This document shows positions 14,401 to 17,120 of a stretch of DNA of 20,158 nt, one piece after another. Positions within the stretch are counted from its first letter, which is position 1. Every line of letters begins with the position of its first letter. Source of the stretch: Macrostomum lignano (Eukaryota); contig NIVC01005225.1 of NCBI GenBank assembly GCA_002269645.1, forward strand, positions 1 through 20,158. Direction: 5' to 3'. The position numbers and the translations under genes are program-made. Under the pieces are notes generated by a model. That model was given only the letters and a program-made list of their open reading frames with translations, was not told the DNA's origin and did not search any database.

Positions 14401-17120
14401 ACTATCAGACTGTTGGGTATTTGAAGCAGCAAGGACCTGCGATTAATCAGGATACAGGATTGATTATTAGACTGTTTGATTTGAGTTGGGTGCCATTTCA
14501 TTTGATGGGGAGCCATTTCATTTGATGGGGCGCCATTTCATTTGATGGGGAGCCATTTCATTTGATGGGGGGCCATTTCATTTGATGTGGTGCCATTTCA
14601 TTTGATGTGGTGCCATTTAATTTGATGGGGTGCCATTTCATTTGATGTATCAGTGCCATTTCAGTTGATAGATCAGTGCCATTTCATTTGAGTGGGTGAG
14701 ATTTCTTTTTTTAAGATGAAGTTACTAATTCTGGTAACGTCTTTGTGATAGTATACTTGTTAAAAGAACCATATGCATAGACCAGAGTCGCGGAAGTGAG
14801 ACATCTACCAAAAGCACGTTCTTGATGGTTGCAGTGAGGATAAACAGTTAGAGCTTAGGAAAATTTAGATATGAATATATTTTTCACACCTAGTCTGATC
14901 CATCCATCGAGTGTAGACCTCCAAGTTGCCTTTAGACAGCAGTTTCGGCTGCAAACTGCGTCCAGAGCCGGGCTCGAACTCTCGGTAGGGTTCCACGCCT
15001 CCGGCAACTACGGTAACAACGAATCGGGCTCGCATTTTGCCGCGAAACTGACAGGTGTACAGGCCAGTGCTGCCCAGGTTGGCCCGGCTGATTACTAGCA
15101 TGTCGAAGATGAGCACACGGCCTCCGGATTCGTGTTTTACCTGCAGATGTGCATCTACATGTAGTACGTTTGAGCTTCTCAATTTGCGTGACACTGACTG
15201 ACTAACTGATTGACCAGCTGACTGACTAACTAACTAACTAACTAACTAACTAACTAACTAACTGACTAACTAACTAACTAACTGACTAACTAACTGACTA
15301 ACTAACAAACTAACTAACTAACTAATTAACTAACTAACTAACTAACTAACTAACTAACTAACTAACTAACAAACTAACTAACTGACTAACTCACTAACTC
15401 ACTAACCAACAAACTAACTAACTAACTAATTAACTAACTAACTAACTAACTAACTAACTAACTAACTAACTAACTAACTAACTAACTAACTAACTAACTA
15501 ACTAACTAACTAACTAACTAACTAATAACTAAGTAACTAACTAACTAACTAACTAACTAATAAGTAACTAACTAACTAACTAACTAACTAACTAACTAAC
15601 TAACTAACTAACTAACTAACTAACTAACTAACTAACTAACTAACTAACTAACTAACTAACTAACTAACTAACTAACTAACTAACTGACTAACTAACTAAC
15701 TAACTGACTAACTAACTGACTAACTAACAAACTAACTAACTAACTAACTAATAACTAACTAACTAACTAACTAACTAACTAACTAACAAACTAACTAACT
15801 AACTAATAACTAACTAACTAACTAACTAATAACTAAGTAACTGACTAACTAACTAACTAACTAACTAACTAACTAACTAACTAACTAACTAACTAACTAA
15901 CTAACTAACTAACTAACTAACTAACTAACTAACTAATAACTAAGTAACTAACTAACTAACTAACTAACTAACTAACTAACTAACTAACTAACTAACTAAT
16001 AACTAAGTAACTAACTAACTAACTAACTAACTAATAAGTAACTAACTAACTAACTAACTAACTAACTAACTAACTAACTAACTAACTAACTAACTAATAA
16101 CTAACTAACTAACTAACTAATAACTAAGTAACTAACTGACTAACTAACTAACTAACTAACTAACTAACTAACTAACTAACTAACTAACTAACTAACTAAC
16201 TAATAACTAAGTAACTAACTAACTAACTAACTAACTAACTAACTAACTAATAACTAAGTAACTAACTAACTAACTAACTAACTAACTAACTAACTAATAA
16301 CTAAGTAACTAACTAAGTAACTAACTAACTAACTAACTAACTAACTAACTAACTAACTAACTAACTAACTAACTAACTAACTAACTAACTAACTAACTAA
16401 CTAACTAACTAACTAACTAACTAACTAACTAACTAACTAACTAACTAACTAACTAACTAACTAACTAACTAACTAACTAACTAGCTAACTAAGTAACTAA
16501 CTAACTAACTCAGCAGAGAAGTAAATCTATCGACGCACCTTAGACACCTGTCCATCAGCCGTTTCAACAAACCACTGCAACTCTGAATCCGACGCTGTAG
16601 GACTCCAGAGCTCCTTGAGTATGCCGACGCCGCTGTCCGACTCGAAGCCCAGTCGCCTCAGCCTGTCGAACCGTTGCACCGCAATCTCCATGTAACGCCT
16701 CGTCGTGAGCGCTACCTTCAGCAGCCTCTTCTTGGCTCGGTGCGCTCGCTCCTTCATGCGTTTCATGAAGTTGCGAAATCGCTGCCGCTTGCCCAGCTTG
16801 GCATTGCTGCCCTGTTTGCCTGTTCCGCCTCCGGTTGCCGGTTTGGTCTTTGTTCTGCTTCGAATTTGAGCTTTCTGCCTATCCTCGTCAGACATCCATA
16901 CCTGATTTTTGTGGTCGTAGCACCGGCTATCAGAGGCCGGCAGACAGTCGCCGCAGACGCCGCAGGATAGCCGGAGACTTTCGCCCTCGGTTAGTAAGAA
17001 AGCGTCTCGTCTGATGGCAGTCAAAGGGCTGAACAGCGGATCGCTGCAGCTGCACCGGACTGGCTGAGGCAAGTTGAGAACTGCCATGGCTGCCAGCAGA
17101 AGATGCAGGGGTGACCTCAT
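11452..17120 (-). CDS. FAM187-like Ig V-type domain type I membrane protein, ~546 aa; exons 17120-16539, 15140-14890, 14436-14061, 12583-12422, 11721-11452
   Basis: All four introns are GT-AG with matching phases (0,2,0,0), and the joined 1641 nt are in frame. Order of features: signal peptide MRSPLHLLLAAMAVLNLPQPVRC; Ig1 GESLRLSC...LQWF...TGLYTC; linker VYTRWMDQT...WGICYV...LPCRS..LP; Ig2 GEFVSLQCP...IAWF...GR|VFTDPGGNLNI...DQRKYYCLHKG; hydrophobic TM VASPLVITASIIFLTLV. This follows recalled FAM187A motifs VFTTFWEW, IGLCY, VSCGSRAVP and RVFIDHGNQLHI...DRGIYYC. The exon 2/3 junction is less certain. Removing one T from the T run near 11505 would give a basic cytoplasmic tail (..WSVLRTCSSRKCRGKLW..) ending at 11385. 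Confidence 0.8.
11834..11955 (+). mobile_element. Fragment of a CAGTGGC-type non-autonomous DNA element (hAT-like MITE remnant)
   Basis: Begins CAGTGGCTTCGCCACCGGGGGGG. Its internal segment CCCCCACC..GTGACCC...TTTTGCTTAAGGGCGCCAAAATGAG recurs, split by the LINE, at 9684-9735 and 10875-10891. The hAT assignment is from recalled end sequences only. Confidence 0.45.
11966..12233 (+). mobile_element. Full-length tRNA-derived SINE with (ATT)n tail, in intron 4 of the FAM187-like gene
   Basis: Pol III A-box TAGCCGAGTGG (11971-11981), B-box GGTTCGATTC (12015-12024), and GGTTG/CGACC acceptor-stem remnant. The non-tRNA body is shared with three other copies, and the tail is AATCAATTATTATTATTA. Confidence 0.9.
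12701..13925. repeat. GC-rich minisatellite, 20 bp unit AGGGGCG(C/G)CCACCA(A/G)GAGAC, ~61 copies, with a 282 bp higher-order duplication
   Basis: Direct reading. Variant monomers AGTGGC (13101/13383), CCTCC (13181/13463) and the 22-bp GAGAGAC monomer (13301/13583) recur at a 282 bp period. Lies in intron 3 of the FAM187-like gene. Confidence 0.98.
14491..14691. repeat. Minisatellite, ~20 bp unit GCCATTTCATTTGATGGGG(A/G/T), ~10 copies
   Basis: Direct reading. It lies in intron 2 of the FAM187-like gene and degenerates towards 14691. Confidence 0.95.
15193..16510. repeat. (CTAA)n microsatellite, ~1.3 kb, with CTGA/CAAA/TAAGTAA interruptions
   Basis: Direct reading. It fills almost all of intron 1 (16538-15141) of the FAM187-like gene. 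Confidence 0.99.

What the first reader, a model, noticed from the sequence alone, without database searches (positions are those of the whole stretch)
16560..16960. FAM187-like Ig domain split by a ~115 aa cationic insert with cleavage sites and exitron-like borders
129 residues separate the B-strand Cys (SLRLSC) from the C-strand Trp (LQWF), against roughly 10-15 in ordinary V-type domains. The insert adds four Cys, a Gly/Thr linker and a strongly basic amphipathic-looking stretch KLGKRQRFRNFMKRMKERAHRAKKRLLKV, reminiscent of cathelicidin-type peptides. It is followed by a furin consensus RLRR. This suggests a surface Ig protein that displays or releases a membrane-active or polyanion-binding peptide. 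In addition, CAG|GTATGG (donor at 16901) and a weak GAG| (16581) enclose an in-frame 321-nt segment whose removal would nearly restore a normal domain, so both isoforms may exist. The sequence features are seen directly; the function is hypothesis.
Basis: partly seen in the sequence, partly recalled or inferred. Interest (0 to 1): 0.7.

Follow-up and report, generated by a model that had tools for sequence, protein, structure and literature searches.

The report
Flatworm FAM187 sperm protein loop insert
The finding is real coding sequence in the flatworm Macrostomum lignano's copy of FAM187/SPE-40, a conserved sperm fertilization protein, and the large positively charged insert in its first immunoglobulin domain occurs in every flatworm version found, so it is more likely a displayed binding arm than a released antimicrobial peptide.

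Summary
The window is Macrostomum lignano contig NIVC01005225.1. The finding lies in exon 1 of a minus-strand five-exon gene (17120..11452) whose 546-aa product is exactly GenBank PAA45894.1, a transcriptome-derived "hypothetical protein".

The sequence features are confirmed:
- 129 residues separate Cys53 from Trp183.
- There is a Gly/Thr linker.
- A 46-residue amphipathic helix carries net charge +16.
- RLRR is present.
- CAG|GTATGG sits at 16902/16901.

The protein belongs to FAM187/SPE-40, shown in 2026 preprints to be needed for sperm fertilization in worm, fish and mouse.

The insert is not unique. All 8 distinct flatworm-type sequences (seven from named trematodes, a cestode and Macrostomum, one transcript of unknown organism) have 89-129 residues in this loop. 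Twelve non-flatworm relatives have 12-18. Two are intronless transcript contigs. AlphaFold2 gives the same plan (disordered linker, then basic helices) in a 26-30% identical relative.

Between M. lignano gene copies the segment evolves like exon, not intron.

Cathelicidin-like release and exitron splicing have no support, though minor splicing cannot be excluded. Most likely it is a flatworm-specific arm displayed on the CDR1-like loop.

Interest is modest.

The parts
11452..17120 (-). Whole coding region of the M. lignano FAM187/SPE-40-like gene (BOX15_Mlig008135g1/g2; PAA45894.1/PAA53869.1; 546 aa; 5 coding exons).
   Evidence: A hand-built model gives a protein 100% identical over 546 aa to P0001. 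The gene range returned for the GenBank record maps to 17120..11452.
16539..17120 (-). Exon 1. It encodes the signal peptide, Ig1 strands A-B, the Cys cluster, the insert and the C strand. The donor is AAG|GTGCGT.
17055..17120 (-). Signal peptide (residues 1-22, MRSPLHLLLAAMAVLNLPQPVR).
   Evidence: Hydrophobic N-terminus read by inspection. AF2 places helix 3-15 there. No dedicated signal-peptide predictor was run.
16920..16964 (-). Cys cluster C53-x2-C56-x2-C59-x7-C67. C53 is the canonical B-strand Cys, C56 is family-wide, and C59/C67 are the flatworm-type extra pair.
   Evidence: The same C-x2-C-x2/3-C-x6/7-C pattern is seen in P0004, Dicrocoelium and Rodentolepis.
16575..16901 (-). It is constitutive coding sequence forming the bulk of the B-C (CDR1-like) loop insert, with net charge +17.
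   Evidence: GC3 is 0.70 against 0.64-0.72 in the other exons. The chance of an open frame is 0.011. Against gene copy L003 there are 7 substitutions and 0 indels, which is exon-like and below the non-coding rate (P about 0.009-0.019).
16791..16913 (-). Low-confidence, probably disordered part of the insert (residues 70-110). It includes the Gly/Thr linker KPATGGGTGKQG.
   Evidence: AF2 pLDDT is below 50 for residues 69-110.
16653..16790 (-). Predicted single long basic amphipathic helix (residues 111-156): net +16, 39% hydrophobic, 77% hydrophobic occupancy at heptad a/d positions. It contains the dibasic sites and RLRR (16653-16664).
   Evidence: AF2 helix H111-156 with pLDDT 55-71. Hydrophobic moment 0.45, P about 0.01.
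16560..16580 (-). Ig1 C strand LQWFVET (residues 181-187) with the canonical Trp183.
   Evidence: AF2 strand E181-187, pLDDT about 88. It aligns with the C-strand Trp of non-flatworm FAM187.
15141..16538 (-). Intron 1, mostly a (TAGT)n microsatellite on the gene strand (ACTA, about 326 copies, at 15221-16510).
14890..15140 (-). Exon 2. It encodes Ig1 strands C'-G (..GRVLIFDMLVISRANLGSTGLYTCQ..) and the start of the central module (YTRWMDQT).
14061..14436 (-). Exon 3. It encodes the central module with the family-invariant G-L-P-C-R-S motif. Paralogue P0032 is 9 aa shorter here (RSLLLQIPN absent), consistent with an acceptor 27 nt downstream.
12422..12583 (-). Exon 4. It encodes the first half of Ig2 (SLQC..AWF).
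11452..11721 (-). Exon 5. It encodes the second half of Ig2 (YYC), the transmembrane helix, a short tail and the stop codon.
   Evidence: AF2 helix 499-539.

Best explanation
**What it is (shown).** The region is ordinary, constitutively retained coding sequence in exon 1 of the Macrostomum lignano orthologue of FAM187/SPE-40. This is a type I membrane protein with two Ig-like domains.

**What the family does (from preprints, not tested in flatworms).** In C. elegans, zebrafish and mouse the protein sits on sperm and is required for fertilization. In vertebrates it is a subunit of the SPARK complex.

**What is special (shown).**
- The 'insert' is a Platyhelminthes-type elaboration of the B-C loop of the N-terminal Ig domain.
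- That loop is the CDR1-equivalent, membrane-distal loop.
- The insert consists of a small extra disulfide hairpin (Cys59-Cys67), then a flexible Gly/Thr/Lys linker, then a long, strongly basic amphipathic helical segment, before the chain returns to the C strand.

**How it most likely works (inferred).**
- The helix stays attached and is displayed at the tip of the ectodomain on a flexible tether.
- It acts as an interaction arm. It would bind either another subunit of the flatworm sperm fertilization machinery through its hydrophobic stripe, or an anionic partner on the egg or in the female tract (acidic glycans, phospholipid head groups) through its basic face.
- The Ig domain itself stays intact through the canonical Cys53-Cys224 disulfide.
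For: **Identity**
- My gene model equals P0001 (PAA45894.1), 100% over 546 aa.
- The GenBank models come from RNA-seq assemblies plus TransDecoder (PMC5730564).

**Family**
- The query hits NCBI-named FAM187A proteins: Lineus at E 2e-14, and Centruroides, Tachypleus and Dinothrombium at 1e-6 to 1e-7.
- AF2 and Foldseek give two Ig domains plus a transmembrane helix.
- The motif G-L-P-C-R-S is invariant in the family alignment.
- The family's function is described in bioRxiv 10.64898/2026.05.13.724128 and 10.64898/2026.05.14.723898.

**The insert is coding and constrained**
- GC3 is 0.70, like the other exons, and an open frame of this length arises by chance with probability 0.011.
- Against gene copy L003 there are 7 substitutions (3 synonymous, 4 non-synonymous) and no indel in 327 nt.
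- That rate equals the other exons (Fisher P 0.65). It is below the non-coding rate, which has about 1.1 indel openings per 100 nt (P 0.009-0.019).

**Lineage-wide presence**
- B-Cys to C-strand spacing is 89-129 aa in all 8 distinct flatworm-type sequences: M. lignano, the unidentified transcript P0004, two Calicophoron paralogues, Dicrocoelium, Rodentolepis and S. mekongi, plus N-truncated Echinostoma.
- Spacing is 12-18 aa in 12 non-flatworm relatives.
- P0004 and P0033 come from intronless transcript contigs that retain the insert.

**Structure**
- AF2 predicts a disordered stretch 69-110, a single helix 111-156 and a disordered stretch 158-177 in M. lignano.
- It predicts the same linker-then-helices plan in P0004 at 26-30% identity.
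- Amphipathicity has P about 0.01.
Against: - Sperm expression and a role in fertilization are not shown for any flatworm. Supplement searches for the gene id found nothing.
- The insert's primary sequence is not significantly similar between M. lignano and other lineages (BLASTP E 0.4 and 1.5). Homology of the insert therefore rests on position, length, the shared extra Cys pair and the predicted architecture.
- pN/pS in the insert (0.40) is higher than in the rest of the protein (0.13). This is based on only 7 changes.
- Helix confidence is moderate (pLDDT 55-71). I could not inspect coordinates to see what the helix contacts.
- The strong net charge is prominent only in M. lignano (+16) and P0004 (+12). 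The parasite orthologues range from -1 to +9.
Confidence: 0.55

Rival explanations
1. Pro-peptide model. Furin or PC-type convertases cut at the dibasic sites and at RLRR. This excises a cationic amphipathic, membrane-active or polyanion-binding peptide from a surface Ig protein.
For: - Many dibasic sites are present: KR111, KR120, KKR130-132, RR141, RLRR153-156.
- The helix is cationic and amphipathic.
- It is flanked by predicted disordered linkers.
Against: - The peptide lies inside the Cys53-Cys224 loop, so two cuts are needed and the Ig domain would become two-chain.
- No cathelin domain or other precursor domain is detected.
- RLRR is followed by Leu at P1', which is unfavourable for furin (from my own knowledge of Nakayama's rules).
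- RLRR is not conserved in P0004, and the site is unalignable in the other sequences.
- The family is a fertilization factor, not an immune effector.
- The basic motif in trematodes is a conserved internal element that ends in W-P.
Confidence: 0.08
2. Exitron model. The 321/327-nt segment is spliced out in an appreciable fraction of transcripts. Two isoforms would result, one with the arm and one with a near-normal Ig domain.
For: - The donor CAG|GTATGG is reasonable. The acceptor TTGCAG| resembles the gene's real acceptors, which all read GCAG|.
- The length is a multiple of 3.
- Both sites are kept in gene copy L003.
- An older fused gene prediction (P0002) places an exon end at or beside this donor and joins it to exon 2.
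Against: - All annotated transcript-derived copies retain the segment.
- The four spliced-out products tested are not in the protein collection.
- Six equally good in-frame pairs occur by chance in exon 1.
- P0002 is a frameshifted ab initio model on an older assembly, not a transcript.
- Trematode intron positions do not match the borders.
- The annotation pipeline filtered out minor isoforms, so absence is weak evidence.
Confidence: 0.12
3. Neutral loop expansion. The insert is a tolerated, largely disordered spacer with no specific function of its own, and only its in-frame length is maintained.
For: - There is no significant sequence similarity of the insert across lineages.
- pLDDT is low to moderate.
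- pN/pS is higher than in the rest of the protein.
- Net charge varies from -1 to +16.
Against: - The insert is retained at 89-129 aa in every flatworm-type sequence examined, spanning Macrostomum, trematodes and a cestode.
- The extra Cys pair is shared.
- The motif R-x-R-[LV]-[RH]-x-R-[IL]-[WY] is conserved across trematodes and the cestode.
- Amphipathic periodicity over 46 residues has P about 0.01.
- No indels separate the M. lignano gene copies, although indels are common in neighbouring non-coding DNA.
Confidence: 0.2
4. Annotation artefact. The segment is a retained intron or non-coding sequence wrongly read as exon.
For: It has GT..AG borders.
Against: - The frame is open, GC3 is exon-like and divergence between gene copies is exon-like.
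- Insert-bearing homologues include two intronless transcript contigs.
- Removing the segment also removes the first two residues of the C strand.
Confidence: 0.02

Closest known systems
FAM187A/FAM187B (vertebrates) and SPE-40/FAM187 (C. elegans): sperm fertilization factor, subunit of the SPARK complex
   Same: - The architecture matches: signal peptide, two Ig-like domains separated by a central module with the invariant G-x-P-C-R-S motif, a single transmembrane helix and a short tail.
- The query has significant sequence similarity to NCBI-named FAM187A proteins.
- The architecture is as described for human FAM187A in 10.64898/2026.05.13.724128.
   Different: - Ig1 carries an insert of about 110 aa in the B-C loop (129 aa between Cys and Trp, against 12-18 in non-flatworm relatives), plus an extra Cys pair.
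- M. lignano also lacks the WSxCxxC and CxxxCP cysteines of the central module that all other aligned members keep.
- Function and expression are untested in flatworms.
Flatworm FAM187-type proteins annotated only as 'Ig-like domain-containing' or 'unnamed protein product' (Calicophoron daubneyi, Dicrocoelium dendriticum, Echinostoma caproni, Schistosoma mekongi, Rodentolepis nana)
   Same: - The loop insert sits at the same place and has similar length.
- The extra Cys pair is present in several of them.
- There is a basic helical element.
   Different: - The insert sequence is not significantly alignable to the M. lignano insert.
- Net charge is much lower (-1 to +9).
- The trematode genes have an intron inside the insert, whereas M. 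lignano encodes it in one exon.
Cathelicidin-type antimicrobial peptide precursors (for example the LL-37 precursor); a resemblance recalled from general knowledge
   Same: Both have a cationic, amphipathic alpha-helical stretch of about 30-45 residues.
   Different: - There is no cathelin prodomain.
- The peptide is internal to a disulfide-bonded Ig domain, not C-terminal.
- Charge density is far higher (+16 over 46 residues).
- The family context is gamete interaction, not immunity.
Exitrons (protein-coding introns inside exons); a concept from general knowledge
   Same: There is an internal GT..AG pair, the length is divisible by three and the composition is exon-like.
   Different: No spliced product is known for this gene, and such site pairs occur by chance in this exon.
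Ig domains with oversized CDR-type loops, for example the bovine ultralong CDR H3 'stalk and knob'; an analogy only, from general knowledge
   Same: A large structured element is displayed from a membrane-distal hypervariable-type loop of a V-like domain, and it includes extra disulfide-forming Cys.
   Different: The loop here is the CDR1 equivalent. The element is germline-encoded, helical and basic rather than a disulfide knob. The protein is not an antigen receptor.

Membership tests
FAM187/SPE-40 | Significant sequence similarity to recognised FAM187 proteins | tested here: met
   phmmer against 1.84 billion representatives gave Lineus FAM187A (P0008) at E 2e-14, Centruroides FAM187A (P0021) at 3.4e-6, Tachypleus (P0020) at 2.7e-6 and Dinothrombium (P0017) at 8.7e-7. 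Human and C. elegans proteins were not among the 30 hits, so the link to them is through these NCBI-named intermediates and the literature.
FAM187/SPE-40 | N-terminal signal peptide, single C-terminal transmembrane helix and short cytoplasmic tail (type I) | tested here: met
   The N-terminus MRSPLHLLLAAMAVLNLPQP is hydrophobic. AF2 predicts helices 3-15 and 499-539, covering VASPLVITASIIFLTLVSA, with about 12 residues after it. No dedicated SignalP or TMHMM run was available.
FAM187/SPE-40 | Two Ig-like domains with the Cys...Trp...Tyr-x-Cys pattern | tested here: met
   Ig1 has C53, W183 and Y222-x-C224. Ig2 has C411, W425 (AWF) and YYC482. AF2 predicts beta-sandwich strands, and Foldseek top hits are multi-Ig proteins at E 5e-8. 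Pfam Ig models score only below threshold.
FAM187/SPE-40 | Central module: W-S-x-C-x-x-C, G-x-C-x-V, G-[LIV]-P-C-R-S and C-x3-C-P | tested here: inconclusive
   G304/C306 (GICYV) and G331/P333/C334/R335/S336 (GLPCRS) are present and invariant in the alignment. The WSxCxxC and CxxxCP cysteines are missing in all M. lignano copies.
FAM187/SPE-40 | Sperm-specific expression and requirement for fertilization | not testable with these tools
   No expression data could be retrieved. Supplement searches for Mlig008135 and Mlig022572 were empty.
Cathelicidin-type AMP precursor | Cathelin-like prodomain followed by a C-terminal mature peptide | tested here: not met
   There is no Pfam hit apart from a sub-threshold I-set match (the full-length P0001 scan returned none). 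The basic peptide is internal (residues 108-157 of 546) and lies inside an Ig domain.
Cathelicidin-type AMP precursor | Antimicrobial or membrane-lytic activity of the released peptide | not testable with these tools
   This needs a synthetic peptide and an assay.
Furin/PC substrate | R-X-[K/R]-R motif in an accessible region | tested here: met
   RLRR lies at 153-156, at the C-terminal end of predicted helix 111-156, and is followed by a segment with pLDDT below 50.
Furin/PC substrate | Favourable P1' residue and conservation of the site in orthologues | tested here: not met
   P1' is Leu157, which is unfavourable by the published furin rules (recalled from memory, not tested here). The nearest relative P0004 has RDRLRILSR, with no R-X-K/R-R at the corresponding place. 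The trematode RLRR-type motifs are not consistently present either.
Exitron | Internal GT..AG inside a coding exon, with length divisible by three | tested here: met
   16901..16575 is 327 nt and 16901..16581 is 321 nt.
Exitron | Existence of both spliced and unspliced mRNAs | tested here: inconclusive
   Only the unspliced form is annotated, in four gene copies. The four exact spliced products tested are not in the collection. No read-level data were available, and the annotation pipeline removed minor isoforms.

The most novel reading that the evidence does not exclude
The cationic amphipathic helix, tethered at the membrane-distal tip of flatworm FAM187, could be a membrane-engaging element of the sperm fertilization machinery. 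On egg contact, or after convertase nicking, it would bind or destabilise the anionic egg membrane or coat. FAM187 would then have a direct membrane-active role in flatworms, not only an adhesion or scaffold role. Because the element is absent from the non-flatworm relatives examined, it could also be a parasite-selective handle on schistosome and fluke fertility.
Probability: 0.1. Interest if true: 0.75.

Novelty: new variant of a known kind. Interest (0 to 1): 0.35.

Why it matters
- FAM187/SPE-40 was recognised as a deeply conserved, essential sperm fertilization factor only in 2026 preprints. How it contacts partners or the egg is still open.
- A phylum-wide insert of about 110 residues in the CDR1-like loop of its N-terminal Ig domain marks the surface that evolution has modified in flatworms. 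It gives a concrete, deletable element to test in M. lignano, which has RNAi and transgenesis.
- Egg production drives pathology and transmission in schistosomes and flukes. A flatworm-specific feature of a fertilization protein could be a selective target.
- This is still a lineage-specific variant of a known protein with no functional data, so the interest is moderate.

Tried and rejected
1. The word-index protein search gave little. With exon 1 it found nothing, with the family alignment only P0001 and P0002, and with P0004 only P0004 itself. The exhaustive representative search was what worked.
2. Pfam, PDB sequence search and Foldseek gave nothing for the insert, and only generic Ig matches for the whole protein.
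3. I considered Trp75 (VWMS, matching GWFI in trematodes) as the true C-strand Trp, which would move the insert to the C-C' region. I rejected this because AF2 puts Trp183 in a confident strand and Trp75 in a region with pLDDT below 50, and MAFFT aligns Trp183 with the C-strand Trp of short-loop relatives.
4. I considered the insert as a former cassette exon or an exonised intron. This was not supported. The Lineus gene is intronless, and the trematode introns lie inside the insert at the basic motif (IRER|RLRRRIWP and IRWR|RLRKRIWQ) rather than at its borders.
5. pN/pS against the duplicate contig L001 was uninformative, because the exons are identical and the contig is an assembly duplicate. 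L003 was used instead.
6. Pairwise BLASTP of insert-only sequences across lineages was not significant. I therefore do not claim sequence homology for the aligned pairing of 'FMKRMKERAH' with 'IRERLRRRIWP'.
7. Literature and supplement searches for Mlig008135, Mlig022572 and DRR639838, and for FAM187 in flatworms, found nothing. The organism behind the P0004 transcript remains unknown.

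
Full report
**Source and gene.** The window is eukaryotic, with microsatellites, a reverse-transcriptase fragment and spliced genes. An exact protein look-up identifies it as contig NIVC01005225.1 of the Macrostomum lignano Mlig_3_7 assembly, GCA_002269645.1.

The finding lies on the minus strand, in exon 1 of a five-exon gene that I first built by hand from reading frames and splice signals. The exons are 17120-16539, 15140-14890, 14436-14061, 12583-12422 and 11721-11452. 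The 546-aa product is 100% identical to a database protein, P0001 (PAA45894.1/PAA53869.1, 'hypothetical protein BOX15_Mlig008135g1/g2'). The annotated gene range maps exactly to 17120..11452. According to the genome paper, these GenBank models come from RNA-seq assemblies (StringTie/TACO plus a de novo transcriptome), with ORFs called by TransDecoder (PMC5730564). The annotated mRNA therefore retains the segment in question.

**Observation check.**
- Cys53 (SLRLSC) and Trp183 (LQWF) are 129 residues apart, and Cys224 (LYTC) closes the Ig disulfide.
- A Gly/Thr stretch lies at residues 93-104.
- The basic stretch 108-136 has net charge +13.
- RLRR lies at residues 153-156.
- CAG|GTATGG has its GT at 16901-16900, and GAG| ends at 16581.

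Three corrections apply:
- Three Cys, not four, lie between Cys53 and Trp183. One of them (Cys56, the C-x2-C) is shared by the whole family, and all three lie upstream of the proposed donor.
- A better acceptor, TTGCAG|, ends at 16575 and gives a 327-nt segment that is also in frame.
- Exon 1 alone contains six in-frame AG|GT[AG]...[CT]AG pairs of at least 60 nt, so such borders are expected by chance.

**Is the segment coding?**
- GC3 is 0.70, against 0.64-0.72 for the other exons. An open 109-codon frame arises in only 1.1% of shuffles.
- A second gene copy in the same genome (L003, NIVC01000544.1, protein P0031) differs in the 327 nt by 7 substitutions (3 synonymous, 4 non-synonymous) and no indel.
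- That rate is indistinguishable from the other exons (Fisher P 0.65).
- It is lower than in alignable introns and flanks, which are 89-94% identical with about 1.1 indel openings per 100 nt. Poisson P is 0.009 for all events and 0.027 for zero indels.
- pN/pS is 0.40 in the insert against 0.13 elsewhere. This suggests looser constraint but rests on very few changes.
- The 'retained intron' reading is therefore rejected. Because exitrons are coding by definition, these tests do not speak to alternative splicing.

**Family.**
- An exhaustive phmmer search of 1.84 billion representatives gave 30 hits.
- The named ones include NCBI 'Ig-like V-type domain-containing protein FAM187A' from Lineus (E 2e-14), Centruroides, Tachypleus and Dinothrombium, plus unnamed Ig-like proteins of molluscs, an annelid and many flatworms.
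- The alignment shows the family's invariant G-L-P-C-R-S motif and the Ig landmarks.
- AlphaFold2 (27-sequence alignment, mean pLDDT 71.7) predicts two beta-sandwich domains, a central beta module and a C-terminal transmembrane helix. Foldseek matches multi-Ig ectodomains.
- This matches the architecture published for human FAM187A: signal peptide, two Ig-like domains, transmembrane region and short tail.
- Two 2026 preprints show that FAM187A/SPE-40 is needed on sperm for fertilization in zebrafish, mouse and C. elegans, and that it is part of the vertebrate SPARK complex.
- Neither preprint mentions flatworms. I found no paper linking FAM187 to flatworms.

**The insert is a flatworm-wide feature.** Measured on the alignment, the distance from the B-strand Cys to the C strand is as follows:

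| Group | Sequences | Spacing | Net charge of the stretch |
|---|---|---|---|
| M. lignano | P0001, P0031, P0032 | 129 | +16 |
| Unidentified organism | P0004 (run DRR639838) | 112 | +12 |
| Trematodes and cestode | Calicophoron daubneyi (two paralogues), Dicrocoelium dendriticum, Schistosoma mekongi, Rodentolepis nana | 89-114 | -1 to +9 |
| Non-flatworm relatives | 12 sequences | 12-18 | -3 to +2 |

- N-truncated Echinostoma caproni also carries the insert.
- P0004 is an intronless ORF on a 2.4-kb transcript contig. P0033, the Dicrocoelium-type sequence, sits on a 2.1-kb Logan contig. In these species the insert is therefore in mature mRNA.
- Several lineages share the extra Cys pair (C-x2-C-x2/3-C-x6/7-C).
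- Trematodes and the cestode share the motif R-x-R-[LV]-[RH]-x-R-[IL]-[WY] inside the insert.
- AlphaFold2 of P0004, which is only 26-30% identical, gives the same plan as M. lignano. A disordered stretch (58-92) is followed by about 50 residues of basic helices (91-109, 113-121, 125-140) and then the C strand.
- In M. lignano the model has a disordered 69-110, one helix 111-156 (pLDDT 55-71), a disordered 158-177 and the C strand 181-187.
- Insert-only BLASTP between lineages is not significant. Common origin therefore rests on position, length, the shared Cys pair and the predicted architecture. It does not rest on sequence.

**Gene structure elsewhere.** The Lineus gene is intronless. In C. 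daubneyi and S. mekongi an intron sits inside the insert, at the same point of the basic motif: IRER|RLRRRIWP and IRWR|RLRKRIWQ.

**Exitron question.**
- The donor and the TTGCAG| acceptor are plausible. The gene's four real acceptors all read GCAG|.
- An old fused and frameshifted prediction (P0002) places an exon end at or beside this donor and joins it to exon 2.
- All four transcript-derived gene copies keep the segment.
- The four spliced-out proteins I tested, three lacking 327 nt and one lacking 321 nt, are absent from the 15-billion-protein collection.
- The annotation pipeline discarded minor isoforms, so low-level exitron splicing cannot be excluded without reads.

**Peptide-release question.**
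- The 46-residue helix has net charge +16 and is 39% hydrophobic. Its hydrophobic moment is 0.45 (P about 0.01), with 77% hydrophobic occupancy at heptad a/d positions. The 'amphipathic cationic helix' is real.
- Nothing else fits a cathelicidin-type precursor. There is no cathelin domain or any other domain match.
- The helix is internal to a disulfide-closed Ig domain, so two cuts would be needed for release.
- RLRR is followed by Leu, an unfavourable P1' residue for furin (from my own knowledge of the published rules).
- The site is not conserved in the closest relative.

**Most likely mechanism (inference).**
- In a V-type domain the B-C loop is the CDR1-equivalent, membrane-distal loop. 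In the N-terminal domain of a type I protein it points away from the sperm membrane.
- A flexible linker followed by a long amphipathic basic helix at that position looks like a tethered interaction arm.
- Its hydrophobic stripe could dock on a partner subunit of the fertilization machinery.
- Its basic face could bind an acidic surface on the egg or in the female tract.
- I give about 0.9 to 'flatworm-type FAM187 orthologue with a constitutive, lineage-conserved loop insert'. I give about 0.45 to the 'displayed interaction arm' function, for an overall 0.55.
- Rivals: neutral loop expansion 0.2, coexisting exitron isoform 0.12 (not mutually exclusive with the main reading), excised bioactive peptide 0.08, artefact 0.02.

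**Novelty and interest.** The protein is already in GenBank and UniProt as an uncharacterised Ig-like protein, and the family is known. What appears undescribed is that flatworm-type FAM187 proteins carry a large structured insert in the CDR1-like loop of Ig1. In M. lignano that insert is extremely cationic. This is a new variant of a known kind. It is moderately interesting because FAM187 has only just been recognised as a core fertilization factor, and because flatworm fertility has medical relevance. There are no functional data.

Noticed in passing
window 14890-14897 and 14061-14436 (minus strand); protein residues 270-370: All M. lignano copies lack four cysteines that every other aligned family member keeps: the W-S-x-C-x-x-C motif and the C-x3-C-P motif of the central module. 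M. lignano has YTRWMDQTR|SLLL... and ...RKIRTHVRVHF. The genomic frame beyond the exon 2 donor reads ...RWMDQTRCEKY*, which may be a relic or a coincidence.
   Followed up: partly
window 14410-14436 (minus strand): Paralogue P0032 (Mlig022572g2, 537 aa) lacks RSLLLQIPN at the exon 2/3 junction. This is consistent with an alternative acceptor (..CAACAG|T) 27 nt downstream of the one used here, so acceptor choice at this intron seems to vary between copies or isoforms.
   Followed up: partly
L001 (NIVC01003011.1) compared with window 8452-20120: A second contig of the assembly carries the same locus with 0 mismatches over 11.7 kb. It differs only by 13 gaps, all in repeats. This is an assembly duplicate or a very recent duplicate, in line with the known redundancy of Mlig_3_7.
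   Followed up: yes
window 12702-13926: A GC-rich 20-bp minisatellite (61 copies, 92% matches) sits inside intron 3. It creates spurious ORFs of 330-465 aa in all six frames.
   Followed up: no
window 15221-16510, 18930-19365, 1867-2669, 3498-4172: There are very long tetranucleotide microsatellites: (ACTA) about 326 copies in intron 1, (AACT) 109 copies, (GTCT) about 200 copies and (TCTG) about 174 copies. Repeats of 30 bp (6293-7107) and 129 bp (548-1025) are also present.
   Followed up: no
window 9763-10831 (+ strand): A degenerate reverse-transcriptase fragment lies 3' of the gene. The Pfam RVT_1 match (E 1.3e-4, 22 bits) is below the curated cut-off. It is presumably a decayed non-LTR retroelement.
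   Followed up: partly
window 2915-3328 (+ strand): This ORF or exon matches Pfam COA8 (cytochrome c oxidase assembly factor 8) at E 5.6e-16, 59 bits. It belongs to a neighbouring gene on the opposite strand.
   Followed up: partly
window 19524-19781 (minus strand): This is the C-terminal exon of a flavin-containing monooxygenase-like gene (Pfam FMO-like, E 2.8e-7) lying upstream of the FAM187 gene. Older UniProt models (A0A1I8FL89, A0A1I8FBK4) fuse that gene to FAM187 and contain frameshifts.
   Followed up: partly
L006 (Calicophoron daubneyi) and L007 (Schistosoma mekongi): Both trematode FAM187-type genes have a three-exon layout with an intron at the identical point of the basic motif inside the insert. 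C. daubneyi has two paralogues on the same contig (consecutive-range accessions CAL8094193 and CAL8094197), suggesting they lie close together.
   Followed up: partly
L004 244-291: The Logan transcript's ORF probably starts at the upstream ATG at position 244, giving MAYLFCFFLCISLLLS..., a signal peptide. The called start at 292 therefore truncates P0004 by 16 residues.
   Followed up: no
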